Assembly (NCBI RefSeq): GCF_006345805.1
Contig: NC_043012.1
Coordinates: 1,054,001 to 1,118,000, forward strand
From: Octopus sinensis
Taxonomy: Eukaryota
Length of the DNA: 64,000 nt
Reading direction: 5' to 3'
Shown here: positions 30,821-56,064 of the stretch, piece after piece
Position numbering within the stretch: position 1 is the first letter of the stretch
Layout: each line of letters opens with the position of its first letter
Notes under the pieces: generated by a model
The model's input: only the letters and a program-made list of their open reading frames with translations
Told to the model about the DNA's origin: nothing
Databases searched by the model: none
Program-made: the position numbers and the translations under genes

Positions 30821-31132
30821 GACATAGATATATTCATACATATATACATACACACATGCATACACACACACAAACAAACACACACACACACATATATCCT
30901 ATACTTGTAAAGTAGTTAAAGGTTGGTGGATGGATGAGCATCCAGTCATAAAAGTACTGTTTGAAATAAGTATCCAACTAACTGATGCCAGCATAGATAA
31001 ATGGAAGTAAAAAAAATGGGCAAATGAATATATGGCTTGGGAAAAGAGAAAAACACACACACACACTTCTTCTCCTCCTTCTTCTTCTTCTTCTTCCTCT
31101 TGCTTCTTCTTCTTCTCCTTCTTTTCCTATGT

Positions 31133-31171
<39 letters not shown>

Positions 31172-31409
31172 ATTCACTGTTGCTTCTTTTTCTTCTTTAA
31201 CTTCTCCCCTTCTCAAACCTTAATTTTCAAATAATAAATACATTTTCTGATGTCTCTCTCTCTCTCTTTTCCCTTTCACCCCACTCTCTCTCTTTCATTC
31301 TCTCTCTTTATTTTTATCTCTCTCTCTTACTGATTTCTCATGTTTTTCTCTCTTTTCTTCTTTTTCTTTTTTATTTCTTTTTCTCTTCCTTTTGGTTATT
31401 GCTGGCGTT

Positions 31410-31850
31410 CTTATTGTTGTTATTGTAACAACTCCTGCTGATACTCTGCTGTTACTCTTGATACTCCTGTTGTTACTCCTGCTGTTAAACTTGCTGTTAC
31501 TTCTGTCACTCCTGCTGATACACCTGATACTCCTGCCATTACTCCTGCTGATACTCCTGCCATTACTCCTGCTGATACTCCTGATACTCCTGCTGTTACA
31601 CCTGTTGTTACTCCTGACACTCCTGTTGATACTCCTGCCATTACTCCTGCTGATACTCCTGATACTCCTGCTGTTACACCTGTTGTTACTCCTGACACTC
31701 CTGCTGATACTCCTGATACTCCTGCTGTTACACTTATTGTTACTCCTGCTGTTATACTTGCTGTTACTCCTGACATTTCTACTGCTACACTTGCTGCTAT
31801 TCCTGGTACTCCTGCTGATATACTCCTGTCACTGCTGTTATTACTCTTCT
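31410..31850 (+). repeat. 9/12-nt minisatellite (ACTCCTGCTGAT/GTT variants), AG-free and YGCY-rich
   Basis: Directly visible tandem units. Confidence 0.9.
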
Positions 31851-31878
31851 ACTTCTCTTTCTCATTCTTGCTGTTCAG

Positions 31879-31893
31879 CAGCCTGAAATAAAG
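31879..31893 (+). CDS. Candidate 15-nt microexon of NCKX loop (QPEIK in phase 0; NAGNAG 12-nt variant possible)
   Basis: ~830-nt AG-free zone ending at TTCAG|CAGCCTGAAATAAAG|GTGATC; phase 0 fits exon 34389; donor is weak. Confidence 0.45.
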
Positions 31894-32329
31894 GTGATCA
31901 TATTTTCAATTTAATTAATGAAACAAAACAATTTCTTTTAATTTAATTTTAAAATTTAATAAAAAATAGAAATATCAAATTTTCTAGAATTAGTTAAAAG
32001 GGTATATATACATATATATATACATATATAAAGAATGTTGTAGTTTGCATTATTGCTTTTGTAATTGACGCAAATTTTTTTTTTTATCTAGTTTCAGCTC
32101 ACGAGCAGTGGCCATGCTGGGGCACCGCCATTGTTCACTGCCAATGTTGTTGTTATTGTTATAGTCTTCCTATGTTGTTGCTGTTATCAGTATTCTTATG
32201 GCTATAATGAAATTAGTATGTTTAGGACTGTTCTATTATATTAGATTGATTCAAACGGTTGTTCAGAGTTTTGGTTACATATATAGTATATACATGCATT
32301 ATGATCATTAGATATAAGATTACAATAAA

Positions 32330-34388: not shown

Positions 34389-34494
34389 AAACCAGTCCGG
34401 AGTTGTAGTTTACCAATTCTACACTCTGGAAGTGGTAGATTTCGTCATGGATTTCTGCAACTCATGATTCATACTATTGATCCACTGGGAGAAG
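34389..34494 (+). CDS. SLC24A2-like: NCKX (SLC24) exon, start of cytosolic loop: KPVRSCSLPILHSGSGRFRHGFLQLMIHTIDPLGE
   Basis: Pyrimidine tract + AAG acceptor, G|GTGAGT donor; RFRHGFLQLMIHTIDPL matches the NCKX loop motif (Nckx30C KFRHGLLQLMIHTIDPL; NCKX2 FQLMIHTLDPL); phase 0 in, phase 1 out, which joins the next exon in frame. Confidence 0.9.
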
Positions 34495-34525: not shown

Positions 34526-34571
<46 letters not shown>

Positions 34572-39162: not shown

Positions 39163-39524
39163 CCAAAGTTCAAGACAAAGCAGTGAAAATGCATGCAGTT
39201 GCTACTCTGAACGTTGTACTAGATGGCGATTCGACTGCGGAAGGAAACACCGAGAAAGACGCTATACAAAAAGATGGTAAAGACCCGTCCATTCATGCTA
39301 TCTCTAATGGGAAAATAGCCAGCGAAGATCAGGCTTCGGCAAAGGAGCAACCATCTCTGGGCACTGAAGTGGGTAGTCAGGAGACTCAGCTTACGAACAT
39401 GGGTTCGGCAGAAATCGGGTCAAACACTGACTTACCACTTCAGACCACCACCTCTCCTTGCACTCCACCTGAAGTTGAAGAAATAAAATTACCATCTCCA
39501 CAATCTGCTGTGCCACAAAAACAA
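39163..39524 (+). CDS. SLC24A2-like: NCKX loop exon: (A)KVQDKAVKMHAVATLNVVLDG...SAVPQKQ
   Basis: T-tract + TTCAG acceptor, CAA|GTAAGG donor; phase 1 in / 0 out; N-terminal part resembles Nckx30C KVDEKATQLHAIASLKVLLD. Confidence 0.88.
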
Positions 39525-39592
39525 GTAAGGGGTTGTTTTTTGGATTCATTTTAATTAAGATCTAATTAATGTATCTTTTTTTTTTTGTGTGT

Positions 39593-39890
39593 GGAGGCGC
39601 AATGGCCCAGTGCTTAGGGCAGCGGACTTGCAGTCAGAGGATCGCAGTTTTGATTCCCAGTTCAGGCATTGTGTGTATTTATTGAGCAAAAACACCTAAA
39701 AGCTCCACGAGGCTCCGGCAGGGGGGTGGGGTGGAGACCCCTGTTGTACTCCAACTTTCTCTCACTCTTTTTCTTCCCGTTTCTTGAGTAATGCTGCGAT
39801 GGACTGGCATCCGTCCAGCTGGGGGGAACACATACACCACAGAAACTGGGAAACCGGGCCCATGAGACTGGCTAGGCTTGAAAAGGGCAC
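39593..39890 (+). mobile_element. SINE-C head with an alternative 3' tail
   Basis: First ~150 nt match 42109-42260, then diverges. Confidence 0.8.
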
Positions 39891-40722
39891 ATATTTATTG
39901 TATTTTCTGGCAAACAAGTTGACATAGTTTATGGTGTAATTATGTAATGTAAGCATTCAAGTGTCTTCAGTTTTTCCAAACCTTGCTGCATTTCACAAGG
40001 AGTTTTTGGTCCTTCAAAGTTGTTTTGATGTATAAGTCAACCAATCTTTTTTGGCTGTAAATTTTTTTTTTGTATAATTCAACTTGTATGGCAGAAAAAG
40101 TGGTATTTATTTACTCCGTATTTGTCTTCTATGAACAAAAGCAGTATTTTTAGTTGCAGTAGAATAAAGAACTCCCGTTTTAGAAAAATTGGAAAGTATT
40201 GGTGAAAGGAAGGACCCAGTTGTAAAATCCTTCTTCTAATAATTTTCTGTCTATACCCATGCTGTCATAGAAAATTGGACTTTAAATGGACGTCTAGTAA
40301 ATCCATTTATGATGCTTTGCTCAGCCTGAGTTAGTAGAAGATACTTGCCCAGGGTTATATGCAGTAGGACTCTACTGAATCCAAAACTAAGTGGGTGGGA
40401 ACTAAAGTTTCCACCACACAGCCATGCCTGTCCCAGAATGTTATTTTAATCAAAGGGTTTGAAAAATAAATACGTGCAAACAAACATTTGTTTTAAAAAG
40501 TATGATTTTTATTAGACCTTTAAGAAACCAATAAAAGATGGCACGAACATAAACGAAAATAATAATAACCTTAAGAAGATAACTGGGTAATGCCATTAGT
40601 ATCTACGGCAAGGAGGAAGAAGAGAGAAAATAAGAATGAAATAAAATAAAACAAGCTGCAATAAAGAAGAGTGGGGGAAAAAAATAAAGAAAATAATATA
40701 AAATAATATAAAATAATATAAA

Positions 40723-41112
40723 AAACAAGAGCACTCAGAGAGTGCAAACCTCCACCAAGGCAACACCAATGTCGTCTCAAATGATTAGTCAGAGAGGATT
40801 TTTAAAATGAGAATATTTGAAATAAACTCAACTGCTCTCACAAATAATACTAAAAATGAGCCCAAATGCTCTCAAAAATTAAGTTAAAAAACAGGAAAAA
40901 ATAATCCATAATCCTTGTCTGGTACCGGATCGAACCCAAAATCTAATAAGTTTGTGCCAGTCACAAGGCCAAGCATCTCTGAAAATTTCCTCTGAATCCA
41001 TCCAGCGGTTCTTGAGGTATCTCGTCCATGGACAAACAAACAAAAAAAGCAAGCAAACTTGACTGGAAGCAATACCTCTGCCTTTGCTAAGGCAGAGGTA
41101 AAGGCAGAGGTA
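40723..41112 (+). mobile_element. Helentron/HINE (DINE-1-like) non-autonomous element
   Basis: 5' AACAAGAGCACTCAGAGAGTGCAAACCTCCACCAAGG; 3' hairpin TACCTCTGCC-TTTGCTAA-GGCAGAGGTA. Confidence 0.6.
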
Positions 41113-41854
41113 CTAAAGATACACCAGTACAATAACCTTAATGTGCATGAGGAAAATATAAAACTTATACATGGGACTATAGCTGAAGATATTTGTCCAT
41201 GGTACCATCTAGTACAATGGTTCTCAACAAGAGTTCCTATGACCCTTGAAGGGTCCATGTGAGATTTTGCTGTTAAAATTTATATCCAATAATTTGGTTA
41301 CACTTCTACAATACGCAAAATAGTTTAGTAATTTTTTTTTTTTATATAATTCCTTGTTTTGTTTTTTTATCAAGGCTGATTGCCTGGGCCAACCTGACTA
41401 CCTCTCTCCATCCCTCCCGATCTTCCTTTAGTGTTTTTTGGTCTTCATGAATTATAAAAATATAGTAATGGGATTTTGTAAACATTGAATAGCTGTGATG
41501 GTCCACCCATGTAAAATAGGAATCAAAGGGCTCCAAAGATAAATTAAAAAATTAAAAAAATGGTAGAATGCCTCTGATCTAGTGGGACCGAACCTAACAA
41601 CTGAGGAATGTGCTTAACAAGAGAGTCATACAAGCAACCTAACCTTTAGTATTCAGAGTACTCTTTCAAATGTAAGAATAAAGATTCCCTTCGGTTATGA
41701 ATGACCATGGGAATTACACCTAGAAAGTTACTCTCCAAGGCACAAGTCTGGGCAAGGTTATTTTATGGAAGATCAGCAGTCACCTGTGCATACCCCCACT
41801 GATGTTAAGCAAAGGAAAAATAAAGGGGTCGATAACCCTTAGCACCAGTGACAT

Positions 41855-41995
41855 CACACCTCATTTCTACAGTTAAGTGAACTGGAGCAACGTGAAATAA
41901 AGTGTCTTGCTCAAGAACACAGCATAGAGCCCTGTCCAGGAATCGAACTCACTACCTCATGATTGTGAGCCTGATGCTCTAATCACTTAACCATT
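41855..41995 (-). mobile_element. SINE-D
   Basis: Reverse complement of TTCTTGAGCAAGACACTTTATTTCACGTTGCTCCAG. Confidence 0.65.
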
Positions 41996-42108
41996 CAATT
42001 TCTTTCAAATGTAACACTTGTTTATTCACATTGTTTACATTTAATCATTTATTAGCTAACAGGTTTGAGAGTTGATTGTTATTATAATGATATTGTAAGG
42101 TAGGTGTG

Positions 42109-42498
42109 GAGGCGCAATGGACCAGTGGTTAGGGCAGCGGACTCGCGGTCATAGGATCACAGTTTCGATTCCCAGACCGGGCGTTGTGAGTGTTTATTGA
42201 GTGAAAACACCTAAAGCTCCACGAGGCTCCGGCAGGGGATGGTGGTGATCCCTGCTGTACTCTTTCACCACAACTTCCTCTCACTCTTACTTCCTGTTTC
42301 TGTTGTACGTGTATTTCAAAGGGCCGGCCTTGTCACTCTCTGTGTCACGCTGAATATCCCCGAGAACTATGTTAAGGGTACACGTGTCTGTGGAGTGCTC
42401 AGCCACTTACACGTTAATTTCATGAGCAGGCTGTTCCATTGATTCGGATCAACCGGAACCCTCATCGTCATAATCGACGGAGTGCTTCCTACTCCTAC
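42109..42498 (+). mobile_element. SINE-C (tRNA-derived head), full length, 15-bp TSD
   Basis: TGTAAGGTAGGTGTG at 42094-42108 and 42499-42513; A-box TGGACCAGTGG, B-box GTTTCGATTCC. Confidence 0.88.
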
Positions 42499-42624
42499 TG
42501 TAAGGTAGGTGTGTGAGGCAGCCTCTGAGCCAGTTTGTACATAAACCAGATGAACAATTTGGGCCTCATATGGCATTTTTAAATTTCAAAGGATTAAAGA
42601 GGAAAACATTTCCGCCATGAAAAT

Positions 42625-43995
42625 CATCATCATCATCATCATCATCGTATAGCGTCCGCTTTCCATGCTAGCATGGGTTGGACGGTTCAACTGGGGTAAG
42701 GCTGCACCAGGCCCAGTCTGATCTGGCAATGTTTCTATCATCATCATTGTTCAACTGTGGTCGAGACAATGGAATTTACCATGCTACGCCAGACTTCATG
42801 GTCCATCATGGCATTACGGAGGTCCTGTTGCTGGATGCCTGTATCCCTGGAGATTACATCAGGGTAGGAGAGTGTGCGCCCTCTGGTATTGTGAGTAGAT
42901 GGCTTCCAGAGGAGAAGAGCGGAAATTACCTCTTTTTCAGCTCTACAACAATGTCCAGCACACTGGACTCTCCTACCTTTCACAAGAGATGACACAGGTG
43001 GTAGTTTCCCATATATTTGCATTTTGGTTGGATGGCGCTTCCACGAGAGATTTTGAGCTCTCATAAGGAGGCGAGTGTAGGTTCCATCCAACCGCCTCTC
43101 AAGCTTCTTTGATAACGTCCAGGTTTCTGAGCTATATAGTAGAATTGGTTCGACTGTGGCTATGAAGATTTCAAGTTTGAAGTCTCTACTTAGATTTGAT
43201 GACCAGATCTTATGCATGTCATTACAGGCTGACCAGGCCATACCCTTTCTAGTTAGAAAGTCTTTTCCAGATGATGATATGTATGACCCAAGATATTTGT
43301 AATCAGAAACCATATTTAAGGGCGCATTGTTGAGATAATGGATGATGCAATCACTGTTGGGCAGGCACTTGTTTATGTATTCAGTCTTGGCCTCATTGAG
43401 GTAAAGACCTACACAATTTGAGGCTTGTTCAAGAGATTGTAAAAGAGACTGGGCATTGGAGAGAGAATCACTGCTAAGAGCGATGTCATCAGCAAAGTCA
43501 GTGTCTGTCAAGTACTCAGCTGAGTGTCTGGAACTTCTTCTTGGTTTTATTTCAAAGCCCTTGCCAGAGATGGTATCAACTGACATACGTAGCACATAAT
43601 CAACAACAATGATGAAAAGAAATGGGGCGAGTGTGTCTCCCTGCAGTATTCCGGCTTTGATTGAGAAAGATGATGTTTCTCCGTCAGGTGTTAAGATGGT
43701 TGAAGACGTATCTGTGTAGAGGACCTTGATGGCAGAAATGATTTTGTCTGGTATCCCATAGAGCTTAAGGATTTCAAACATCTTGTACCTATCTACAGAA
43801 TCGAACGCTTTAGAAAAGTTTACAAATACCATTGCAAGATCACGATTAAATGCTTTTGATTCTTCAATAAGTCTGCATAGGCATAGTATCTGGCTCAGTG
43901 TTTCTATGGCTGGATGCCCTTCCTAATGCCAACAACTCCGTGAGTGTAGTGGGTGCTTTTATGTGCCACCAGCACAGGTGCCAGACGAGGCTGGT
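42625..43995 (-). mobile_element. RTE 3'-end fragment (family E) interrupted by the nested RTE
   Basis: Left part 42625-42738 and right part 43899-43995 join into the family E consensus. Confidence 0.85.
42739..43898 (-). mobile_element. 5'-truncated RTE-clade LINE of a second family, with an uninterrupted RT ORF and 9-bp TSD
   Basis: NFSKAFDS, GILQGDTLAPFLF, DFADDIAL, YKYLGS; TGTTTCTAT duplicated at 42730-42738 and 43899-43907; (GAT)n tail right after the stop. Confidence 0.93.
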
Positions 43996-44088
43996 AAATC
44001 AAGTTGATTAATTAGAAAAGTTATAATTTATTAAATGTTAAATTATCTCAGGCATTTAAATGATGTTTCTTTGAATGTTTTTTTGCAG

Positions 44089-44268
44089 AAAGAACTTCCC
44101 ATGCCTGAAACTGGTACAGATATGGCAGCGCCACCTGCTGGATTAGTGGAGGAGGAGGAGCCATTAGATATTAGCTGGCCAAAAGAAAACAAGAAACGGA
44201 TATCATATATATTCATGGCACCAATTATGTTTACATTATGGATTACATTGCCGGATGTGCGAAGAGCT
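44089..44268 (+). CDS. SLC24A2-like: NCKX exon: KELPM...EEEEPLDISWPKENKKRISYIFMAPIMFTLWITLPDVRRA
   Basis: TTTTGCAG acceptor, GCT|GTAAGT donor, 180 nt; EEEEPL.SWP and LWITLPDVR are conserved NCKX motifs. Confidence 0.95.
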
Positions 44269-44399
44269 GTAAGTAAAAGGATTTTCTATGTTGTTGTTAT
44301 TATTATTATTTTTCCTCTTTCAGTTTTGTTTCCATTTCTTACCAAGCATCTTCCCAACACTTAGGACAAAGAAACTCACTGTATACATTGGTAGGCCAT

Positions 44400-44765
44400 T
44401 ATTATTATTAATCCTTCGTAATACAGTGTAGGTAAAAATGCACTGGAGTCTTTAGTCAAGTTACAAGGACCTCACACAAATTATATTTTCCATAAGATGT
44501 GGGCTGTGCCCAATAAGGCTGCTTTTTGCAAGACATCAATTTGGCGGGGGATTTCCAGTTGCCTTAAGAAGTCTTGAAGTTTCAAAGGGACTGAGCCCAA
44601 TGCTCCAATCACCACTGGTATCACTTTTACATTACCCTCTCGCACACCCTAGTCTTGCCATTTCCACTTTCAATTCGGAGTACTTGGTGATTTCTTCAAT
44701 CTCTTTACTCACAACATTCACGTCATTTAGTATGGCAACATCAATGATCTGACAGTATTTGTCTT
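44400..44765 (-). mobile_element. R4/Dong-like RLE C-terminal remnant flanked by (TAA)n
   Basis: Minus-strand translation CQIIDVAI...VIPVVIGALGSVP...LQKAALLGTAHIL. Confidence 0.75.
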
Positions 44766-44794
44766 TATTATAATAATAATAATTATTATTATTA

Positions 44795-44828
<34 letters not shown>

Positions 44829-45250
44829 TTCAATGCATGCCATCAAAGTGACACTAGGGTAAAATAGGCAAAGCCCAGTATACCCATCATCACTACCCAT
44901 CTGATAAGGGTACACCAGGCACATGCATTACAACCATTTGTGCACGACAAGGTGATCTCATATCAAGATAAACAGCACATGACTTTGAAGGTGGGGCCCA
45001 GTTAGAATTTTCTTCAGGTCAAGTAACCCATCCTGCTCAAAAGGTCCCTGAATAAGGATTGTTTAAGGATGTTGGATGAAACATTCATGTCTTCAAAGGT
45101 GAATTATCCAAACCCCAAAGAATTCCTCTCAACTCATGGCTATGATACTCACCCACTACTTCTACTGGTGATCAGAGATACACATATCATCAGCCACTAA
45201 GGGACATGCTCAACTGGTTAAGGTCAAACAACTGATAAGCAAATCTGTGA

Positions 45251-45482
45251 AGGCGGCGAGCTGGCAGAAACGTTAGCATGCCAGGCGAAATTCTTAGCGA
45301 TATTTCGTCTGCGTTACGTTGTGAGTTCAAATTTCGCCGAGGTCGACTTTGCCTTTCATCCTTTCGGGGTCGATAAATTAAGTACCAGTTACGTACTGGG
45401 GTCGATGTAATCGACTTGATATCTATGTCTGTCCTTGTTTGTTCCCTCTGTGTTTAGCCCCTTGTGGGTAATAAAGAAATAG
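45251..45482 (+). mobile_element. SINE-B, young, inside an unclassified repeat (44830-45605)
   Basis: Full head GGCGGCGAGCTGGCAGAAACG. Confidence 0.88.
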
Positions 45483-45605
45483 GTATTGAGCAGAATATTT
45501 GTTGTAGCCCATCTTTTATACTAAGACAAAACAATGTGCATGATAACACTTCCAATCAGTTAAGATAAGAAGCCATGAGAACCACTGCCTGATATTGCAT
45601 CAGGG

Positions 45606-45606
<1 letters not shown>

Positions 45607-45687
<81 letters not shown>

Positions 45688-45705
45688 TTATTATTATTAT
45701 TATTA

Positions 45706-45801
<96 letters not shown>

Positions 45802-45825
45802 CATTATTATCATTATTATTATTAT
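45607..45825. repeat. (ATT)n microsatellite
   Basis: Direct. Confidence 0.97.
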
Positions 45826-45839
45826 GACGACGACGATGA

Positions 45840-46550
45840 CGATGCAGCAAGGACCTCAGGCAGACAGTACTTTATGCAATATGTGTGCAGTTCCAAGTAA
45901 TGCCAATTTTTGCAATACACCAAGACTGGAGGGTATTTCTAAAGTTTCCAGATGTTTCTTCATGTTAGGTGGTAGTGAACCCAATTCTCTGTGGACAACA
46001 GGAACAACCTTTATGTTCGGCCCTCCTAGTGGTCACATCTTGACAATCTCAATTCTCAGGTCTCCCTATTTATCAATCTTTTCTCTTTCTTTCATGATAA
46101 TATATTGATCCCCTAACCCAGCCACATCGATTATTAGGCACTCTTGTTTGTCCCTCCTGAAAGTTATTATATCCAGCCTTCAGTGCTCTCAGACCTTGTC
46201 CGACTGGAAGTCAATCTCCCAGAGGATCTTTGCCTTCACATTTTCATCCATTACCTTTTCCAGTGTATTTCGGAACCAAACGCATTACCTCGTATCCATA
46301 CTTCCAGTATAGAGCCAATGAAGGTTTGGGGCTACCTTGTCATGTCTGTGCTTGTTGCGCTCTTTCTGCACAAGACTTTCACAAGTACTGACAATGTGTC
46401 ACACTTTCAACTGTCCCCGTATTGTGCTAAAGGCCTCCGATGAATTTCAGCATGTGACACATCTTTCGACCAGAGAAATTGGATCGCTGCTTTTTGTTCT
46501 TCTTTGGTGCACATTGCTAGTGGAGCGGCCAAGCTTACACTGTAAAGCCA
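45840..46550 (-). mobile_element. R4/Dong-like RLE fragment abutting a long (TAA)n array
   Basis: Minus-strand HIVSTC...RHDKVA...CLIIDVA...KIDKYGDLRIEI...LQKLALLGTAHILHKVLS. Confidence 0.8.
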
Positions 46551-46599
46551 GAAAGAAAAATGATGGGATCAGGCACAAACTTCGATCACATGACCATAA

Positions 46600-46700
46600 T
46601 AGTACCAACTATAAGCCCCCACATGCGCAGAAGACAGTGTGACAATAATAAAGATATGTTATGGTGAAAGGGCGGATAATTTTTGACTTCCCCTCGTGTA
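46600..46700. mobile_element. Possible mariner-type terminal fragment
   Basis: GCGGATAATTTTTGACTTCCCCTCG(T/G)TA resembles a mariner TIR; no partner found. Confidence 0.3.
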
Positions 46701-46708
46701 TATATATA

Positions 46709-46764
<56 letters not shown>

Positions 46765-46768
46765 GTGT

Positions 46769-46821
<53 letters not shown>

Positions 46822-46829
46822 GTATATAA

Positions 46830-49800
46830 CCAACAAGCCACCTGGTCACCTACCGATCGGGCCGGCATACTAGCCAAATCGACTACATCCTTGCCAGAAA
46901 AAGGGAAAGATGGCTGCTTAAAAATGCCAAAACCTTCCCAGGCGAAGAATGCACCCCACAACATAGACTGGTAGTTAGTGACTTTAGGACCAGGAATAAG
47001 AGGGCGACTAGAAGACGACCAACATGGAGAAGAAGGGTCTGGAAGCTTAAAGCCCCTGCGAATGGACAGAGATTTAGAGATATGTTACTTGAAGCCTTTG
47101 ACGAAGTGGAAGGGGGTATAGCTACACATGGGGTAGAAGACAACTGGACGTTTCTGAGGGACAACCTGCTGAAAGCCGCTGACCAGATCTGTGGCTGGTG
47201 CAAAGTCCCCTTAAGACCCAAAATAACGTGGTGGTGGACAATATTGTTGACAGGGCTATAGACAAAGAAACAGGCTGGAAGGCCTGGAAGAACGGTGGTA
47301 GCAGGGAAGGGTATCAGACGCCAGAAGGAAGCTAGGAGACAGGTCTATCTAGCCAGAGGGGAAGCAGATAAGAGAAAATTTGCCAATGTCCTGCGCCGTG
47401 AGGATGAAAGACTTGAGGTATTTCGTGTTGCAAGACAGTGGTGAGAGAGAATCGTGATGTGGTAGGAGAGAAATGTGTTCGCATGGAGGATGGTTCACTT
47501 GCGCTAAATGAGGATGCAAAGAGAGAAGCTTGGAGACGCCACTATGAAAGGTTACTGAATGAGGAAAATGAATGGGATAAGAGAGTCTGCCGAATGTTGA
47601 CCCTACAGAGGGACCAGCTATCCGAGTTGATAGTTCCGTGGTAGCTAAGGCAATTAGAAGCATGAAGACAGGAAAGCCCCAGGCCCATCAGGAATTACTG
47701 CAGAGATGCTCAAAATATTGGCAGTGTCGGCTATAACCTAGTCACCCGTATAGTCAACCAGGTGATACACGAAGGAGTCATACCCAATGACTGGTGCAGC
47801 AGCATACTAGTCAACTGCTACAAAGGAAGGTGATGCCCTAGATACAAATAATTACAGAGGTATCAAGCTGTTGGATCAAGTAATGAAGGTTACGGAGAGG
47901 GTCATAGCCCAACTAATTAGAGAGAGAGTTAGTTTAGATGAGATGCAGTTTGGGTTCGTGCCAGGGAAAAGTACCACTGATGCTATATTCCTGGTAAGGC
48001 AGCTGCAGGAGAAATACCTAGCCAAAGATAAGCCCCTGTACCTGGCTTTCGTTGACATGGAGAAAGCTTTGATAGGGTCCCCCGATCCCTTATCTGGTGG
48101 TCAATGAGGAAACTAGGGATAGATGAATGGCTGGTGAGGACTGTGCAAGCCATGTACAGAGATGCCGTAAGTAAGGTTAGGGTTGGCAACATGTACACAG
48201 AAGAATTCAAAGTAGAGGTTGGGGTCCACCAGGGTTCAGTACTCAGCCCCTCCTATTTATCATAGTACTCCAGGCAATTACGGAGGAATTCAAGACAGGC
48301 TGTCCCTGGGAGCTCCTCTACGCTGACGACCTTGCTCTTATTGCTGAGTCACTATCAGAACTGGAGGAGAAGTTCCAGGTGTGGAAGGAGGGTTTAGAAT
48401 CAAGGGGCCTTAGAGTCAACCTAGTAAAACCAAAGTACTAATAAGTAGAAAGGTAGACAATCCACAAATATCTTCAGGAAGATGGCCCTGCTCATCTGTA
48501 GAAAAGGTGTAGGTAGAAACTCTATAAGATGTACCCAGTGTAAGCTATGGACACATAAGAGGTGCAGCAATGTCAAAGGTAGGCTAACTGGGAAGATAGT
48601 TTTTGTATGTGGCAGATGCTCGGGAGCATTAACCTCCGAAAATCTGCAGAAAACAACTTCCGTCACTTTCCAGGGGGAAAAACTAGAAGTAGTTGATAGC
48701 TTCATTATCTAGGTGACCAAGTCAGTAGTGGGGGTGGGTGCGCTGAAAGTGTAACTGCTAGAATAAGAATAGCCTGGGCAAAGTTTAGGGAGCTCTTACC
48801 TCTGCTGGTGACTAAAGGCCTCTCGCTCAGAGTAAAAGGCAGACTGTATGATGCGTGTGTACGAACAGCCATGCTACATGGCAGCGAAACATGGGCGTGA
48901 CTGCTGAGGACATGCGTAAGCTCGTGAGGAATGAAGCCAGTATGCTCCGATGGATGTGTAATGTCAGTGTACATACTCGACAGAGCGTTAGCACCTTGAG
49001 AGAAATGTTGTACCTAAGAAGCATCAGTTGTGGTGTGCAAGAGAGACGATTGCGCTGGTATGGTCATGTGGCGAGAATGGATGAAGATAGGTGTGTGAGA
49101 AAGTGCCAATCCCTAGCAGTTGAGGGAACCCGTGGAAGAGGTAGACCCAGGAAAACCTGGGACGAGGTGGTGAAGCACGACCTTCGAACTTTAGGCCTCA
49201 CTGAGGAAATGACCAGGACCGAGACCTTGGAAATATTCTGTACGTGAGAAGACCAGGCAGGACAAGTGAGCCCAGCCCACTTATGAATGCCTTTCCTCCC
49301 TTGGACACAAAGACCGGTTGAGGCAAGCGAAGTCGTATAGAACCTCATCCGACGACAGACACCCATGCCAACCCCCCATGCTGCGAAGACATGTTGGGGC
49401 AAGCGAAATCGAATCGAAATCGAAACCGAATGAACCAGCCAGGATCCCTGGCCTGGTGGTACGTAAAAAGCACTATCCGACTCGTGGCCGTGGCACGTAA
49501 AATACTCCAATGCGACCGTACGACAGGCACCCATGCCAACCCCTTTGCTTGTGAAGACATGTTGGGGCAAGCGAAATCGAAATCGAATTGAACCAGCCAG
49601 GATCCCTGGTCTGGTGGTACGTAAAAAGCACTATCCGACTCGTGGCCGTGGCACGTAAAATACTCCAATGCGACCGTACGACAGGCACCCTTGCCAAACC
49701 CCTTTGCTTGTGAAGACATGTTGGGGCCAAGCGAAATCGAAATCGAATTGAACCAGCCAGGATCCTGGTCTGGTGTACGTAAAAAGCACTATCCGACTCG

Positions 49801-50240
49801 TGGCCGTGGCACGTAAAATACTCCAATGCGACCGTACGACAGGCACCCTTGCAACCCCCTTTGCTTGTGAAGACATGTTGGGGCAAGCGAAATCGAAATC
49901 GAATTGAACCAGCCAGGATCCCTGGTCTGGTGGTACGTAAAAAGCACTATCCGAACGTGGCCGATGCCAGCACCGCCTCACTGGCTTCCGTGCCGGTGGC
50001 ACATAAAATACACCAATCTGACCGTGGCCGTTGCCAGCCCCGCTGGCACCTGTGCAGGTGGCACGTAAAAAGCACCCACTACACTCACGGAGTGGTTGGC
50101 GTTAGGAAGGGCATCCAGCTGTAGAAACATTGCCAAATTAGACTGGAGCCTGGTGCAGCCTTCTGGCTTCCAGAACCCCGGTCGAACCGTCAACCCATGC
50201 TAGCATGGAGAACGGACGTTAAACGACGATGATGATGATG
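46830..50240 (+). mobile_element. 5'-truncated RTE-clade LINE (APE C-terminus, RT, Cys-rich motif, 3' UTR with tandem modules, (GAT)n tail), frameshifted
   Basis: IDYIL..., QFGFVPGKSTTDAIF, FVDMEKAFD, GVHQGSVLSP, LLYADDL, RWYGHVARM, RGRGRPRKTW; tail CCAACCCATGCTAGCATGG...GATGATGAT. Confidence 0.93.
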
Positions 50241-50243
50241 ATG

Positions 50244-50274
<31 letters not shown>

Positions 50275-50323
50275 CATATATATACATATATATATTATAT
50301 ATATGCATATATATATGTATATA

Positions 50324-50354
<31 letters not shown>

Positions 50355-50804
50355 GTGTATATATATATATGATTATATGTATATTAATATAATATATATA
50401 TAATATATATATATATATATGTATGTATATATATATATATATATATTGGGTGCTAACAATGAGGGCAATGGTGACGACAATGATGACGGTGGTAGTGGTG
50501 GTGGTGGTGGGGATGTCGATGGTTGTGGGTGTTGATGGTGGGGATGATGACAATGATGACAACCAGCCATGACCTCACCATGGCAGTATTGTTTTTGAGC
50601 ATAACTTAAAATATCTTTTCACCCGGAAGCAAAATTATTTATCCTTCACAGTAGAAGCAAAATGCTTCCTAAGGCTCTAAAACTTCATGAAATTATTACA
50701 AAAAGAATAAGGAAAACCCACCAGTTTAAGATTTAACCTCTTAATATACACATTTATTTTCAATTTCCATGTATTTTTTATTTTATTTTTTTCAAATTTC
50801 CATG

Positions 50805-51215
50805 TAGGCGCAGGAGTGGCTGTGTGGTAAGTAGCTTGCTTACCAACCACATGGTTCCGGGTTCAGTCCCATTGCGTGGCACCTTGGGCAAGTGTCTTCT
50901 GCTATAGCCTCGGGCCGACCAATGCCTAGTGAGTGGATTTGGTAGACGGAAACTGAAAGAAGCCCATCGTATCTATGTTTATATATGAATGTGTGCGTGT
51001 ATGTTTGTGTGTCTGTGTTTGTCCCCCTAGCATTGCTTGACAACCGATGCTGGTGTGTTTATATCCCCGTCACTTAGCGGTTCGGCAAAAGAGACTGATA
51101 GAATAACTACTGGGCTTACAAAGAATAAGTCCCGGGGTCGAGTTGCTCGACTAAAGGCGGTGCTCCAGCATGGCCGCAGTCAAATGACTGAAACAAGTAA
51201 AAGAGTAAAGAGAGT
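50805..51215 (+). mobile_element. SINE-A, young
   Basis: Close to consensus. Confidence 0.9.
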
Positions 51216-51717
51216 ATATGTTTTTTATTATTTATTTTGTTTCTGTATATAACGAAGAATAAGTGCATAGATTATTTTGGATCAGTTATGACTTATTATG
51301 AAATGATAATTAATGATAGTTAATGATAGAAAATGAGAATAACATTATGAATGAATTAGTTCAAGTTAGACATAAGTGACAGATACCTCAGAGTACAGTG
51401 AATGAATATTTTTGTTCAAATATATATTTACTAGACATATCTGAACAAAAATATGTTAAGAGGTTAACACTCAAACAGTGACTTAATTTAGGATGCTCTA
51501 ATTGCATAGTAAAGATAATGTTTTATAATTCATTACTTAATTAACACCTTATAATCTCTTAATTAGTGCTGTTAAGCAAAATTGCATAAATACATATCAA
51601 TTTGTAATATTACAGACGTTTAATTTTTTCTCAGCATAGATGCAGCCAGTGGGAACCCTAATTAAAATATTAATTAACATCTTCCGATATAATACATTAT
51701 TTGTAATATTACAAATA

Positions 51718-52132
51718 CTCTTTTACTCTTTTACTTGTTTCAGTCATTTGACTGCGGTCATGCTGGAGCACCGCCTTTAATCAAGCAACTCGACCCCGGG
51801 ACTTATTCTTTTGTAAGCCCAGTACTTATTCTATCGGTCTCTTTTGCCGAACCGCTAAGTAACGGGGACGTAAACACACCAGCATCGGTTGTCAAGCAAT
51901 GCTAGGAGGACAAACACAGACACACAAACACACACACGCATACATATATATATATATACATATATATACGACGGGCTTCTTTCAGTTTCCGTCTACCAAA
52001 TCCACTCACAAGGCATTGGTCGGCCCGGGGTTATAGCAGAAGACACTTGCCCAAGATGCCACGAAAGGGGACTGAACCCGGAACCATGTGGTTGGTTAGC
52101 AAGCTACTTACCACACAGCCACTCCTGCGCCT
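51718..52132 (-). mobile_element. SINE-A, young
   Basis: Reverse-complement match. Confidence 0.9.
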
Positions 52133-52283
52133 ATATGTGTAACTTTTTTTTCAGCATAGATACAGGCATTGTAAAACTAATACCTGTTTTACAGAGTTGT
52201 ATTCAGTTCTATTTCTTTCATTATGTTTGATTCACCAAATAACATCCTCTGATATAATACATTATACTTTGCCAAAATTTCAG

Positions 52284-52403
52284 ACAAAGAAAAAATATTT
52301 CCCTGTCACATTTATTGGCAGCATCGTGTGGATTGCTGCATTCTCTTATTTAATGGTGTGGTGGGCCGATAGTTCCGGCAGTGCCACATATATTGAAGAC
52401 ACG
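52284..52403 (+). CDS. SLC24A2-like: NCKX exon: TKKKYFPVTFIGSIVWIAAFSYLMVWWADSSGSATYIEDT
   Basis: TTTCAG acceptor, ACG|GTAAGT donor, 120 nt; FPVTFIGSIVWIAAFSYLMVWWA is a near-invariant NCKX segment. Confidence 0.96.
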
Positions 52404-52482
52404 GTAAGTTTATCATTTATACACCATACTTCATTTAAACTTCTCTATTTCTCTTGTATTTATATGTGCTGCGTACCATATA

Positions 52483-52986
52483 TCTTTATATATAAAAGTG
52501 AAGTTGTGTGAGTGTCTGTCTCCTACGATTTAGATTCCTAACTACTCCCACATTTTGTGGTGCAGTTTAACCAAAACCGGGTATCTTATAGTCGTGATTC
52601 ATATCAAGCCCTTCTGGGTATTAGCGCGCGTCTACGATGAGTCTACGATTTTAAAAAATATTTACCATCATTTTTTTCCATTTTAATGCAATTTTTTCGC
52701 TATTATATAAGGGAAGTAACTCTCTAAAAATGTCTACGATGATTCAACGATTTAAAAAAAAATTTACCATAATTTTTTCCATTTTAATGCATTTTTTTCC
52801 TATTATATAAGGGAAGTAACTCTCTAAAAATGTCTACGATGAGTCAACGATTTAAAAAAAAATTTACCAGCAGTTTTTTTTCCATTTTTAATGCATTTTT
52901 TTGCTATTTTTGGGCTATAACTCTCTAAAAATGCTTATATAGTTATTTCCCTTACAAACCCGAGCAACGCCGGGCGATACTGCTAG
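52483..52986 (+). mobile_element. Non-autonomous Helitron with internal ~90-bp tandem repeat (x3)
   Basis: A|TC 5' end, CCCG-AGCAACGC-CGGG hairpin then CTAG|T 3' end, no TSD. Confidence 0.8.
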
Positions 52987-53222
52987 TTTAGCATAAAATC
53001 AGAAAAGCATAAATTTCCTGCATAGTTCATACTTAAATTGTATTCCACCACTAGTTCATTAACACAAACACTATCAAATGAATAATTACATAAGTAGGAT
53101 ACATAATTACAATAAATCAATTTAAGGTAAAATGATTCCAAAATAGTGTTTTCCGAAATCACTAGTAACATTATGTTATGATAATCAGAAAACTGTTATC
53201 TATATATATATATCTATATCTA

Positions 53223-53290
<68 letters not shown>

Positions 53291-53300
53291 CATCTATTTA

Positions 53301-53371
<71 letters not shown>

Positions 53372-53474
53372 ATATAATATAAAAGTGTATAAAAATTTAT
53401 ACACGGAGAGAAGACCATGAGGTGGACTTCTTACCAGCTAAAGAGGGCAGTCAAAACCCAAACTACAAAAAGCA

Positions 53475-53536
53475 TTCTTATTTATGGCGCATTGATTGTA
53501 GGTGAGCAGGACACATAAATGTGCCATAAATAAGAA
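53475..53536. repeat. Short inverted repeat, 19-bp arms
   Basis: TTCTTATTTATGGCGCATT versus AATGTGCCATAAATAAGAA. Confidence 0.7.
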
Positions 53537-53542
53537 CGTATT

Positions 53543-53600
<58 letters not shown>

Positions 53601-54108
53601 CATGTGTGTATGTGTGTATCTTTGTAAGCGTTGCTGTGTGTCTGTTTCTCTTCAAATGATACCTATATTTCTCAACAAATCTTAAGTAAATTTCACAGTT
53701 AGATTCTAGTGCAAATAACAACAATATCATCATCATCATCATCATCCTTATAATCATCATATGTAAAATAAATTCCAGTTTGAGGATTTCCTTTGCAGTA
53801 AATCATGGATTGATCAAGAAAAGAAATACAAAAACAACTGAAGTTTGTAACAGAGTGGTAGTTGAGTAGAAGTGTTAGTGTGAGGCACAGAAATGTTGTC
53901 AGTCAGCTCAAAATCTGATGTTCTTTCTCCTTTGGTCTTTCATTAAGCTTTCTTTCTCTCTCTCTCTCTCTCTCTTGTTCTCTCTCGCTCATTCTCCTCT
54001 CTCTCCTTCTCCCACTCTCTCACTCTCTCATTCACATTTGCAAATTTCCTCACTCACTTTTCATTTGAAATATGTGAATGTTCTTTAAGTATTTGTAATT
54101 AAATGTGC

Positions 54109-54158
<50 letters not shown>

Positions 54159-54184
54159 TTATACATCTTTATAAATATGTATAT

Positions 54185-54590
54185 GACTGGCACCCGGCAG
54201 ATGCCAGGACCCCTGAACTGGTGGTACGTAAAAAGCACTATTCGAATCATGGCCGATGCCAGCGCCGCCTCAACTGGCTTCCGTGCCAGTGGCACGTAAA
54301 AGGCACCATCCGAATTGTGGCCGAAGCCAGTGCCGCCTCGACTGGCTTCCGTGCCGGTGGCACGTAAAATGCAACAATCCGACCGTGGCCGTTGCCAGCC
54401 TCGCCTGGCACGTAAAAAGCACCCACTACACTCACGGAGTGGTTGGCGTTAGGAAGGGCATCCAGCTGTAGAAACATTGCCAGATAAGACTGGAGCCTGG
54501 TGCAGCCTTCTGGCTTCCCAGATCCCCGGTCGAACCGTCCAACCCATGCTAGCATGGAGAATGGACGTTAAATGATGATGATGATGATGA
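54185..54590 (+). mobile_element. RTE 3'-end fragment (family E)
   Basis: Matches 49930-50240, including CTGGTGGTACGTAAAAAGCACTAT. Confidence 0.88.
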
Positions 54591-54977
54591 TGTATATGAA
54601 GACAACAATTAAAATGGTAATGATACAGACACAGCAAAAAAGCCATACGGCTGTAAGACAAGACAAAAATGGGTAACACAAAGGAGAGATGAAAAAGTGT
54701 CCTAAAAGACTAAAGTAGAGCGAAGAGCTCAGGAAATTGTGACCAGTTTGGTCGAAAGCAATGCGAAAACGAATGACACCACCTTAGGCTGTCAGGGATT
54801 ACGTGATAGTGGGAGGGGGGACACAGAGAAAGACAAACAGCAAGAGAAAGGAAATCAAGAGAAGTGAGGAGCTCAGATAAATATATGTGTGTGTGTGTGT
54901 GTGTGTTGTGTGTATTCAGTGTGCGATGGGTAAATTGTCACCATTTTATGATTCTAATTGTGCACATGCGTATTTTG

Positions 54978-55212
54978 TCGACTACACCTATTTCTTTACT
55001 ACCCACAAGGGGCTAAACACAGAGGGGACAAACAAGGACAGATAAATGGATTAAGTCGATTATATCGACCCCAGTGCGTAACTGGTACTTATTTTATCAA
55101 CCCCAAAAGGATGAAAGGTAAAGTCTTCCTCGACGGAATTTGAACTCAGAACGTAGCGGCAGACGAAATACCACAAAGCATTTCGGCCGGCGTGCTAACG
55201 ATTCTGCCATCT
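54978..55212 (-). mobile_element. SINE-B
   Basis: Reverse-complement match. Confidence 0.85.
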
Positions 55213-55229
55213 CGTCGTCATTTTGTCGA

Positions 55230-56000
55230 CTACACCGCATAGTAGGGACAGTTGGGAACCAACTGTGAGAAAACAGCACCATGGTGCAATTCACTCAGCT
55301 AGAAATTTGGAAACGACATGCTGTACTGCTTAGCATTCACGAAGGTGAAATTTACAAACATATCAGTGTTCGGGGTGTGAGTCTGAGGACATGTACCGAG
55401 AGTGATAAAAATGAAGCATTCAGTCAACATCATAGTGTTTAGAATGATCACTAGTGATTGCAAGATTATGCCTCAATTCATCTTCCCACACAGCCTCAGA
55501 TTCAACACAAAGGTCTATATAAAATACTTGGAGGAGGTAGTGCTGCCCTGATCAAGAGGGTGGCTGCCAGAGGACCCTATGTCTGGCAACAGAACTCTGC
55601 ACGATGCAACACGAGCAGCAGAACCCAGTTATGGCTGTCAGACAATATCTAGGACCGCATCACCCCTAACATCTGACCACCTAACTCCCCAGACTGTAAT
55701 CCCATTCATTATTATGTGCGGGGTGCAGTTGACCAACAAAACTCCTTATGACAACAAAGATGAACTGAAGTCAAGGATTATGGCAGCATTCACTAACATA
55801 GACAAGGAGACCATCCAGAAGAGTTGCAGGAGATTCTGAAGTCATCTGGAGGCCATGGTTCATGCCAAGAGCGAAATTTGCTCTTTAGTATTTCAAGATA
55901 GTTTTATGTAATTTTGGTAAATATATCTGTTAAAATGAGATGTCAGTGTTATTTTCATTTTTGCGTAAATTAGATGACAGTTTATTCACCACACTCTGTA
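55230..56000 (+). mobile_element. Tc1/mariner DD37D (maT-like) transposase remnant
   Basis: YVWQQ(D)SA...WLSDN...PPNSPDCNP..YYV.GAV; end TAGATGACAGTTTATTCACCACACTCTGTA also seen near 25574. Confidence 0.75.
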
Positions 56001-56030
56001 CACTCACGCGCACACACGCACGCACACACA

Positions 56031-56061
<31 letters not shown>

Positions 56062-56064
<3 letters not shown>

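What the first reader, a model, noticed from the sequence alone, without database searches (positions are those of the whole stretch)
31049..31900. ~830-nt AG-free zone with a YGCY/UGC minisatellite ending exactly at a candidate 15-nt NCKX microexon
Seen: by eye I find no AG dinucleotide from 31049 to 31876. The tract runs from (CTT)n/(CTA)n through a long pyrimidine tract into a 9/12-nt minisatellite with about two dozen TGCT/TGCC motifs (hand count ~24). The first AG opens CAG|CAGCCTGAAATAAAG|GTGATC, read as QPEIK in phase 0, the phase the next NCKX exon (34389) requires. Known: AG-exclusion zones, UGC motifs near the 3' splice site (SRRM3/4 eMIC) and YGCY clusters (Muscleblind/MBNL) mark regulated neural microexons, and vertebrate NCKX loops are alternatively spliced. 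Inference: the minisatellite could be a tandem, length-variable splicing-regulator array that tunes an ion exchanger. Caveats: the donor is weak, and CT-rich repeats are AG-poor by composition.
Basis: partly seen in the sequence, partly recalled or inferred. Interest (0 to 1): 0.8.

Follow-up and report, generated by a model that had tools for sequence, protein, structure and literature searches.

The report
Real octopus NCKX microexon behind AG-free repeats
The 15-base candidate is a genuine, evolutionarily conserved mini-exon of an octopus sodium/potassium/calcium exchanger gene, and it sits at the end of an 828-base AG-free stretch made of pyrimidine-rich repeats; whether that repeat array actually regulates its splicing is unproven, and cuttlefish splice the same mini-exon without it.

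Summary
There is no AG from 31049 to 31876 (828 nt), the longest such tract in the window. The tract has 24 TGCT/TGCC motifs in a 9/12-nt minisatellite. The first AG opens CAGCCTGAAATAAAG|GTGATC.

The microexon call is right. Octopus vulgaris gene models, built with Iso-Seq and RNA-seq, read ...TLAVK-QPEIK-KPVRSCSL. Sepia pharaonis has the orthologous AG|AGTGAAATAAAG|GTGATT. Sepia esculenta larval transcripts include it in some contigs and skip it in others.

The 3' splice-site layout resembles the published Srrm234/eMIC microexon code: long AG-free zone, (UC)n tract, UGC near the AG and a weak donor. Neural specificity could not be tested, and UGC is not discriminating in this gene.

The minisatellite-as-regulator idea is not shown. 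The array is present and AG-free in O. bimaculoides. It is absent in Sepia, which still splices the exon alternatively. The lack of new AGs between the two octopuses is only weakly unexpected (P 0.03-0.18). A second 653-nt AG-free repeat in the same intron has no exon.

Most likely, pyrimidine-rich repeats expanded inside or upstream of the polypyrimidine region and are tolerated because they carry no AG. This is a new member of a known kind, of moderate interest.

The parts
31049..31876 (+). AG-free zone (828 nt) upstream of the microexon acceptor
   Evidence: AG positions; AG count 0 against 12.3 expected; the AG-free zones of the other six exons are 26-114 nt.
31066..31171 (+). (CTT)n and (TAC)13 microsatellites at the 5' end of the AG-free zone
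   Evidence: TRF. The same two microsatellites are present in O. bimaculoides L001 at about 7800-7875.
31247..31327 (+). Branch-point-like CUGAU (A at 31250) followed directly by a (UC)n tract. Sepia has a similar order of elements (UCUAAC, about 40 nt of spacer, then (UC)10).
   Evidence: positions; Sepia tctaac followed by (tc)10; O. bimaculoides has ctaat at the orthologous spot; TC repeat.
31330..31405 (+). Second branch-point-like CUGAU (A at 31333, 545 nt from the acceptor) followed by a roughly 70-nt U-rich polypyrimidine tract. This is the best-conserved block of the zone between the two Octopus species.
   Evidence: Alignment (about 96% identity here against 92.5% for the whole zone) and positions.
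31431..31830 (+). 9/12-nt minisatellite (units ACTCCTGAT, ACTCCTGCTGAT/GTT and ACTCCTGCCATT; higher-order periods 33 and 78). It carries 24 YGCY/UGC motifs and 14 CUGAY branch-point-like motifs.
   Evidence: It is unique in the window, present but about 85 nt shorter in O. bimaculoides, and absent in Sepia.
31815..31878 (+). Proximal 3' splice-site region: CUGAU (A at 31818, 60 nt from the AG), a 77% pyrimidine tract, UGCUGU at -10, and a tandem acceptor CAG|CAG
   Evidence: TTGCTGT upstream of the acceptor is also present in Sepia.
31879..31893 (+). 15-nt cassette microexon CAGCCTGAAATAAAG (QPEIK), phase 0 to phase 0
   Evidence: O. vulgaris models P0001 and P0122 read AVK-QPEIK-KPVR. The Sepia ortholog AGTGAAATAAAG is seen in the genome and in transcripts. 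It is the only AG|x[DE][LIV]K|GT candidate found upstream of exon A.
31894..31899 (+). 5' splice site GTGATC, which lacks G at +5 and is the weakest donor in this part of the gene. GTGAT is conserved in Sepia.
34389..34494 (+). Next constitutive NCKX exon (KPVRSCSLPILHSGSGRFRHGFLQLMIHTIDPLGE), which starts in phase 0
39163..58395 (+). Remaining NCKX exons in the window: 39163-39524, 44089-44268, 52284-52403, 56881-57017 and 58149-58395 (including the stop)
   Evidence: tblastn of P0001; boundaries read.

Best explanation
Positions 31879-31893 are a genuine 15-nt cassette microexon of the cephalopod NCKX (SLC24A2/Nckx30C-type) K+-dependent Na+/Ca2+ exchanger. It inserts QPEIK into the large cytoplasmic loop just before the conserved KPVRSCSLPILHSGSGRFRHGFLQLMIHTIDP segment.

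It is one of a chain of tiny alternative exons at this loop position. In Sepia these are 78, 12 and 12 nt.

Its acceptor has the layout typical of regulated, probably neuronal, Srrm234/eMIC- and PTB-type microexons. The elements are a branch-point-like CURAY, a (UC)n/U-rich tract, a UGC close to the AG, no competing AG, and a weak GTGAT donor.

In the Octopus lineage the pyrimidine-rich region upstream of the acceptor was inflated to 828 nt. This happened by slippage and expansion of CT-rich microsatellites and of a 9/12-nt minisatellite. These repeats persist because their units contain no AG, so they cannot create a competing 3' splice site. The extreme AG-free zone is therefore mainly a tolerated by-product of repeat expansion at a polypyrimidine region, not a proven regulatory device.

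Shown: the exon is real, conserved, and alternative in Sepia; the repeat architecture is shared by two Octopus species and absent in Sepia.

Inferred: the regulator identities, neural specificity, use of the proximal branch point (A at 31818, -60), and near-neutrality of the array.
For: - O. vulgaris proteins with QPEIK-KPVR. That annotation was built from Iso-Seq and RNA-seq with PASA (PMC10700109).
- The window is 100% identical to O. sinensis CM016874.1.
- The Sepia pharaonis genome has AG|AGTGAAATAAAG|GTGATT 8.6 kb upstream of exon A. TGAAATAAAGGTGAT is identical to octopus.
- S. esculenta transcripts show three forms: skip, +SEIK and +GDVK+SEIK. The runs are larval RNA-seq.
- Only this site fits a microexon pattern upstream of exon A.
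- The published eMIC cis-code is long AG exclusion zones, UGC near the 3'ss, UCUC-rich tracts, CUAAY and a weak 5'ss (PMC8797185).
- Neural microexons have extended, unpaired branch-point-to-3'ss regions (PMC12871342). Here the 661-nt region is predicted to be less structured than its shuffles (z = +2.06).
- For the by-product reading: Sepia has no array and an AG-free zone of only 119 nt. A 653-nt AG-free repeat at 3367-4020 has no exon. AG avoidance between O. sinensis and O. bimaculoides gives P = 0.03-0.18. A standard CUGAU plus pyrimidine tract lies 60 nt from the AG.
Against: - There are no Octopus junction reads or tissue data, so inclusion in O. sinensis itself and neural specificity are inferred.
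- The first AG after the longest AG-free tract being a real acceptor (about 7 real acceptors among 3298 AGs) argues that the tract and the exon are linked. The link could be functional rather than only mutational.
- AG is the only dinucleotide absent in both Octopus species.
- Two of the four simulations give P of about 0.03.
- The best-conserved block of the zone is a CUGAU plus 70-nt U-tract 545 nt upstream, which would fit a distant branch point.
- The microexon itself lies in an assembly gap in O. bimaculoides (L001 8446-8694), so its conservation within Octopus rests on O. vulgaris only.
Confidence: 0.6

Rival explanations
1. The minisatellite is a selected, length-variable tandem array of binding sites (YGCY for Muscleblind, UGC for Srrm234/eMIC, UCUU/CUCUCU further upstream for PTB). 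It would tune inclusion of the microexon in Octopus.
For: - The array has 24 YGCY/UGC motifs in 477 nt, the densest cluster in the window.
- It is retained, with 18 motifs, in O. bimaculoides, and its length differs by whole units.
- The RNA is predicted to be unstructured and therefore accessible.
- It abuts a proven alternative microexon.
- Regulatory elements often lie between distant branch points and their exon (PMC1431707).
Against: - The motif count follows trivially from one repeated unit (CUGCUG per unit).
- Sepia has 1 YGCY in the last 200 nt and still splices the ortholog alternatively.
- Conservation of the array (92.5% in aligned columns, with many indels) is no higher than that of the neighbouring intron.
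- There are no binding or expression data.
- Within-species length variation was not examined.
Confidence: 0.2
2. This is the distant-branch-point model. The functional branch point and polypyrimidine tract are the CUGAU plus U/UC-rich blocks at 31247-31405, that is 545-628 nt upstream. The array sits between the branch point and the acceptor, so any AG in it would be used instead. The whole zone would then be under selection to stay AG-free.
For: - Sepia has a similar order of elements (UCUAAC, about 40 nt of spacer, then (UC)10) at the 5' edge of its own AG-free zone.
- O. bimaculoides has CUAAU at the position of 31247.
- The block 31330-31405 is the best-conserved part of the zone.
- AG is absent in both species.
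- Exons with distant branch points are known and are typically alternative (PMC1431707).
Against: - Documented distant branch points reach only about 400 nt (PMC1431707).
- A conventional CUGAU plus 77% pyrimidine tract lies 60 nt from the AG.
- The AG-free zone extends 200 nt further upstream than these candidate branch points, through (CTT)n and (TAC)n, which this model does not need.
- The selection test is marginal.
Confidence: 0.15
3. The 15-mer is not an exon. It would be a chance AG...GT in an open frame at the end of a compositionally AG-free repeat.
For: After any AG-free tract there is a first AG. A GT within 15-30 nt and five sense codons are individually likely by chance. The O. 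sinensis RefSeq model (P0121) does not include it.
Against: - The exact peptide QPEIK is joined to KPVRSCSL in O. vulgaris transcript-based models.
- There is an orthologous exon with an identical 3' part and donor in Sepia, seen in mRNA.
Confidence: 0.03
4. The minisatellite is coding. It would be either a Thr/Pro-rich exon on the + strand (TPADTPAV... frame) or a Gly/Val/Ser-rich ORF on the - strand (31420-31776).
For: There are open frames of about 140 aa (+) and 118 aa (-) across the array.
Against: - Open frames are expected in a stop-free tandem repeat.
- The + frame is not the QPEIK frame and ends in a stop inside the microexon. The QPEIK frame has many stops upstream.
- No acceptor AG exists anywhere in the zone.
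- There are no Pfam hits, no matching product on record and no Rfam family.
Confidence: 0.01

Closest known systems
Srrm234/SRRM3-4 (eMIC-domain)-dependent neuronal microexons, as described in mammals and Drosophila (PMC8797185; PMC12871342)
   Same: The exon is 27 nt or shorter and frame-preserving, and it lies in an ion-transport protein. [quoted passage not shown] It is deeply conserved within the clade (Octopus and Sepia).
   Different: Dependence on Srrm234 and neural specificity are untested. UGC is not discriminating in this gene. A CUAAY branch site is seen in Sepia and O. bimaculoides, but only CUGAY in this window. The AG-free zone is one to two orders of magnitude longer than usual and is made of tandem repeats.
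Distant-branch-point exons marked by AG exclusion zones (Gooding et al. 2006, PMC1431707)
   Same: The AG-free zone is 100 nt or longer, it lies upstream of an alternative cassette exon, and it contains pyrimidine-rich, PTB-like motifs.
   Different: Known cases reach about 400 nt, whereas this zone is 828 nt. The branch point is unmapped and a conventional proximal one is available. The zone consists mostly of microsatellite and minisatellite sequence.
MBNL-regulated exons with intronic YGCY clusters, and CUG-repeat RNA
   Same: There are dense UGCU/UGCC motifs (CUGCUG in most units) in the upstream intron of an alternative exon.
   Different: The motifs come from a single repeated unit. They are not conserved in Sepia, and there is no evidence of Muscleblind binding or dependence.
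Alternative splicing of the NCKX/Nckx30C cytoplasmic loop in other animals
   Same: Small cassette exons sit at the same place, between the STDxL segment and the (K/R)FRHG(L/V)LQLMIHTIDP segment. Examples are isoforms in Lepidoptera (±13 aa and ±8 aa) and fish NCKX2 (±13 aa).
   Different: The cephalopod microexon sequences (TLAVK/GxVK, QPEIK/SEIK) have no recognisable counterpart outside cephalopods.

Membership tests
Cassette microexon | 27 nt or shorter, a multiple of 3, and flanked by AG and GT | tested here: met
   The exon is 15 nt, in the context ttcAG|CAGCCTGAAATAAAG|GTgatc.
Cassette microexon | Present in mature mRNA, joined to the flanking exons | tested here: met
   O. vulgaris models read AVK-QPEIK-KPVRSCSL, and that annotation is transcript-based. 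Sepia transcripts carry cag|AGTGAAATAAAG|AAACCAGT. This was not tested with O. sinensis reads.
Cassette microexon | Skipped in some transcripts (alternative) | tested here: met
   Met for the Sepia ortholog: L005 shows gcccag|AAACCAGT, against L004 and L006-L010 which include the exon. For Octopus itself it could not be tested; only inclusion models exist.
eMIC/Srrm234-dependent neural microexon | UGC motif close to the 3' splice site | tested here: inconclusive
   UGC lies at -10 in octopus and -23 in Sepia. However, 3 of the 6 other exons also have a TGC within 40 nt.
eMIC/Srrm234-dependent neural microexon | Long AG exclusion zone and a long UC-rich polypyrimidine tract | tested here: met
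   The AG-free zone is 828 nt, against 26-114 nt for the other exons. In Sepia it is 119 nt, with (UC)10.
eMIC/Srrm234-dependent neural microexon | Strong CUAAY branch site | tested here: inconclusive
   Sepia has UCUAAC and O. bimaculoides has CUAAU. The window has 16 CUGAY but no CUAAY.
eMIC/Srrm234-dependent neural microexon | Neuron-specific inclusion that depends on the eMIC domain | not testable with these tools
   No tissue-resolved Octopus RNA-seq is available here. The Sepia contigs come from whole larvae.
MBNL-regulated exon | Cluster of YGCY motifs in the flanking intron | tested here: met
   There are 24 in 477 nt and 10 in the last 200 nt, the window maximum.
MBNL-regulated exon | Motif cluster conserved with the exon | tested here: not met
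   O. bimaculoides keeps 18 motifs, but Sepia has only 1 in the last 200 nt although the exon is conserved and alternative.
MBNL-regulated exon | Inclusion changes with Muscleblind | not testable with these tools
   This needs an experiment.
Distant-branch-point exon | AG exclusion zone of 100 nt or more | tested here: met
   828 nt.
Distant-branch-point exon | Branch point plus polypyrimidine tract at the far end of the zone, actually used | not testable with these tools
   Candidates lie at 31250 and 31333 and are conserved in O. bimaculoides. A proximal candidate also lies at 31818. Lariat mapping is needed.
Distant-branch-point exon | Purifying selection against new AGs in the zone | tested here: inconclusive
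   No AG arose among 47 substitutions between O. sinensis and O. bimaculoides. The expected number is 1.6-3.3, giving P(0) = 0.03-0.18.

The most novel reading that the evidence does not exclude
The Octopus-specific array would be functional. It would be either the longest branch-point-to-acceptor interval known (over 500 nt, kept AG-free by selection), or a unit-number-variable platform of UGC/YGCY/CUGAY motifs that sets the inclusion level of an ion-exchanger microexon. In the second case a minisatellite would act as an evolvable 'rheostat' for neuronal Ca2+ extrusion.
Probability: 0.15. Interest if true: 0.7.

Novelty: new member of a known kind. Interest (0 to 1): 0.45.

Why it matters
- It adds a validated, deeply conserved (octopus and cuttlefish) microexon to a neuronal and photoreceptor-type Ca2+ exchanger.
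- It shows that the NCKX loop in cephalopods is built from a chain of 12-78-nt alternative exons separated by very large introns. This explains why RefSeq splits the gene in O. sinensis and O. bimaculoides and misses this exon.
- The locus is a natural test case for how far a branch point can lie from its acceptor, and for whether tandem repeats within the region upstream of the acceptor are neutral passengers or splicing modulators.
- It also shows that reading AG-free tracts can find unannotated microexons in repeat-rich genomes.

Tried and rejected
1. I looked for the upstream microexon TLAVK, for QNTQNVNS and for the O. bimaculoides variant RDLK in the window. None was found. The LAVK/TLAV hits at 23746 and 11109 lie in SINE-like repeats without splice sites. 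The O. vulgaris gene spans 139.8 kb, so these exons lie upstream of the window.
2. I searched for Octopus transcript fragments across the junction in the protein collection. Only unspliced genomic read-throughs from other molluscs turned up. A search with the N-terminal half gave split gene models only.
3. L002 turned out to be the same assembly as the window, so it is not independent.
4. O. vulgaris DNA could not be fetched. The gene range was too long and one product was not on record.
5. The O. bimaculoides microexon falls in an assembly gap.
6. I tested the idea that the minisatellite unit derives from the ancestral segment next to the acceptor, by aligning the Sepia 60-mer to the array. 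The result was not significant (score 16 against shuffles 12.5±2.3, P about 0.10).
7. Coding or ncRNA roles for the array are rejected. There are no Pfam or Rfam hits, the frames are incompatible, and exact ORF look-ups came back empty.
8. Dinucleotide-preserving shuffles are uninformative for a count of 0. I used mononucleotide expectation and substitution simulations instead.

Full report
**Observation**

The window has no AG between 31048 and 31877. This is the longest AG-free gap in the 64 kb. The runner-up is 653 nt at 3367-4020.

The tract is a mosaic of tandem repeats:
- (CTT)n at 31066-31123
- (TAC)13 at 31133-31171
- (TC)n at 31253-31327
- a T-rich tract to about 31405
- a minisatellite at 31431-31775 and beyond, with 9- and 12-nt units and higher-order periods of 33 and 78

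The minisatellite carries exactly 24 TGCT/TGCC motifs, the densest YGCY cluster in the window, where the median is 4 per 477 nt. It occurs nowhere else in the window. AG is the only dinucleotide with zero occurrences; composition predicts 12.3. The first AG opens ttcAG|CAGCCTGAAATAAAG|GTGATC.

**Gene context**

The + strand carries the 3' half of an NCKX (SLC24A2/Nckx30C-type) gene. Its exons are:
- 34389-34494 (KPVRSCSL...IDPLGE)
- 39163-39524
- 44089-44268
- 52284-52403
- 56881-57017
- 58149-58395

The window is 100% identical, N-run included, to Octopus sinensis CM016874.1 (L002). That locus is therefore not independent evidence. The O. sinensis RefSeq protein (P0121) starts at a Met inside exon 34389, so it does not cover the candidate.

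**Is the 15-mer an exon? Yes.**

Two O. vulgaris proteins read ...NSTLAVK-QPEIK-KPVRSCSLPIL... These are CAI9733922.1 (P0001) and CAI9733921.1 (P0122). That annotation combined Iso-Seq and RNA-seq transcript assemblies (PASA/EVM) with protein alignments and ab initio models (PMC10700109). The protein sets used for alignment do not contain QPEIK: O. bimaculoides P0124 has RDLK, and S. pharaonis P0125 starts downstream. A 15-nt exon in such large introns is therefore most plausibly transcript-derived. That last step is my inference.

Independent support comes from cuttlefish. The Sepia pharaonis genome has ...ccattaAG|AGTGAAATAAAG|GTgatt 8.6 kb upstream of its KPVRSCSL exon (L003 1344-1355). The string TGAAATAAAGGTGAT is identical to octopus.

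Logan transcript contigs that published papers identify as Sepia esculenta larval RNA-seq runs show four forms:
- gcccag|AAACCAGT, both microexons skipped (L005)
- gcccag|AGTGAAATAAAG|AAACCAGT (L004)
- gcccag|GGCGATGTCAAG|AGTGAAATAAAG|AAACCAGT (L006-L010)
- a form with a further 26-aa exon (P0134)

The orthologous exon is thus a true alternative cassette. The loop is encoded by a chain of tiny exons.

In the window, 31879 is the only AG|x[DE][LIV]K|GT site upstream of exon A. Only about 7 of the 3298 AGs in the window are real acceptors. I take this as evidence that the tract and the exon are linked.

**How the acceptor is built**

Sepia shows the compact version. The last AG is at 1221, followed by UCUAAC at 1229, (UC)10, a U/C-rich tract, UUGCUGU, and the acceptor at 1342. 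Its AG-free zone is 119 nt.

Octopus has the same elements, but spread out:
- CUGAU at 31247 (CUAAU in O. bimaculoides), directly followed by (UC)n
- a second CUGAU at 31330 with a roughly 70-nt U-tract
- the minisatellite
- a last CUGAU at 31815 (branch A 60 nt from the AG), followed by 77% pyrimidines and cuUGCuguucAG

The donor GTGAT lacks G+5, is the weakest in this part of the gene, and is conserved in Sepia.

[quoted passage not shown] It also fits the extended, unpaired branch-point-to-3'ss region of vertebrate neural microexons (PMC12871342). The 661-nt region 31240-31900 folds worse than all 20 shuffles (z = +2.06).

There are caveats. UGC within 40 nt is also found at three other exons of this gene. 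The Sepia AG-free zone (119 nt) is no longer than that of exon 39163 (114 nt). The resemblance is suggestive, not diagnostic. Neural specificity could not be tested.

**Is the AG-free minisatellite a regulator?**

O. bimaculoides (L001) has the same mosaic and is AG-free for at least 648 nt up to an assembly gap. The gap unfortunately swallows the microexon itself. In O. bimaculoides the array part is about 85 nt shorter; across the whole zone the two species differ by 228 gap columns, largely whole repeat units in both the microsatellites and the array, and by 47 substitutions in 624 aligned positions. Length variability between species is therefore real.

Three results argue against a required function:
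- Sepia lacks the array. It has 1 YGCY in the last 200 nt, yet splices the ortholog alternatively.
- A substitution simulation expects only 1.6-3.3 new AGs, so seeing none has P = 0.03-0.18 depending on the model. Nearly all AG-creating changes in this sequence are transversions.
- A comparable 653-nt AG-free repeat elsewhere in the same intron has no exon attached.

A conventional branch point and tract lies 60 nt from the acceptor, so nothing forces a distant branch point.

Some points favour the functional readings. AG is the only dinucleotide missing in both species. The best-conserved block of the zone is the CUGAU plus U-tract at 31330-31405. The literature on distant branch points links long AG-free zones with regulated exons, although only up to about 400 nt (PMC1431707).

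**Rejected alternatives**

The array is not coding. Its open frames are a by-product of a stop-free repeat. They are out of frame with QPEIK, have no acceptor AG and no Pfam match, and no product is on record. No Rfam family reaches threshold. A derivation of the repeat unit from the ancestral sequence next to the acceptor is not statistically supported.

**Verdict**

The candidate microexon is real and conserved across coleoids. Its acceptor resembles eMIC/PTB-type regulated microexons. The record-length AG-free zone is best read as expansion of pyrimidine-rich repeats at the polypyrimidine region, tolerated because the repeats carry no AG. I give a minority probability (about 0.15-0.2 each) to a genuine distant branch point or to a tunable binding-site array.

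The finding is a new member of a known kind. It is already implicit in the O. vulgaris annotation, though missing from O. sinensis and O. bimaculoides RefSeq. Interest is moderate (0.45).

Noticed in passing
window 3367-4020: A second long AG-free tract (653 nt) made of a CT-rich simple repeat that is open in all three + frames (LSIYLSVC...). No exon is attached. It serves as a control showing that composition alone can give AG-free tracts over 600 nt here.
   Followed up: partly
window 31876-31881: Tandem NAGNAG acceptor ttCAG|CAG. Use of the second AG would give PEIK (12 nt), the same length as the Sepia SEIK exon. The O. vulgaris models use the first AG.
   Followed up: no
P0124 (O. bimaculoides XP_014776596.1), no window coordinates: The older O. 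bimaculoides model reads TLAVK-RDLK-KPVR where O. vulgaris has TLAVK-QPEIK-KPVR. RDLK is found neither in the window nor in L001. It could be a model artefact or another microexon.
   Followed up: partly
L001 8420-8445 (O. bimaculoides), next to the gap at 8446-8694: Just before the assembly gap the sequence (...cattcttattctatgtaatacc) departs from the window's ...cattcttgctgttcag at the acceptor. The orthologous microexon lies inside the gap.
   Followed up: no
window 34464; P0121, P0142: RefSeq splits this NCKX gene. The O. sinensis and O. bimaculoides C-terminal models start at a Met inside exon 34389-34494. The N-terminal half is a separate model ending STDNLIE plus intron read-through. 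The O. vulgaris gene range is 139.8 kb.
   Followed up: partly
proteins P0019-P0120: The same loop position is a hot spot for small cassette exons in other animals: Lepidoptera ±VTRVRSTDQLMPT and ±HQ[ST]AAQ[AT]L, and fish NCKX2 ±TSPVSLEDDGKLS.
   Followed up: partly
Sepia esculenta transcripts P0002/P0134 versus P0128/L006-L010: The neighbouring 12-nt microexon reads GTVK in some contigs and GDVK (GGCGATGTCAAG) in others, a two-base difference. It could be a polymorphism or two mutually exclusive microexons.
   Followed up: no
window 34526-34573: A perfect (TCA)16 microsatellite lies 32 nt downstream of the donor of exon 34389-34494.
   Followed up: no
window 30406-30650; 23640-23860; 10960-11240; 32090-32130: A 62-nt x 3.9 tandem repeat and several SINE-like dispersed repeats fill the intron. 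There is also an assembly N-run at 27240-27339.
   Followed up: no
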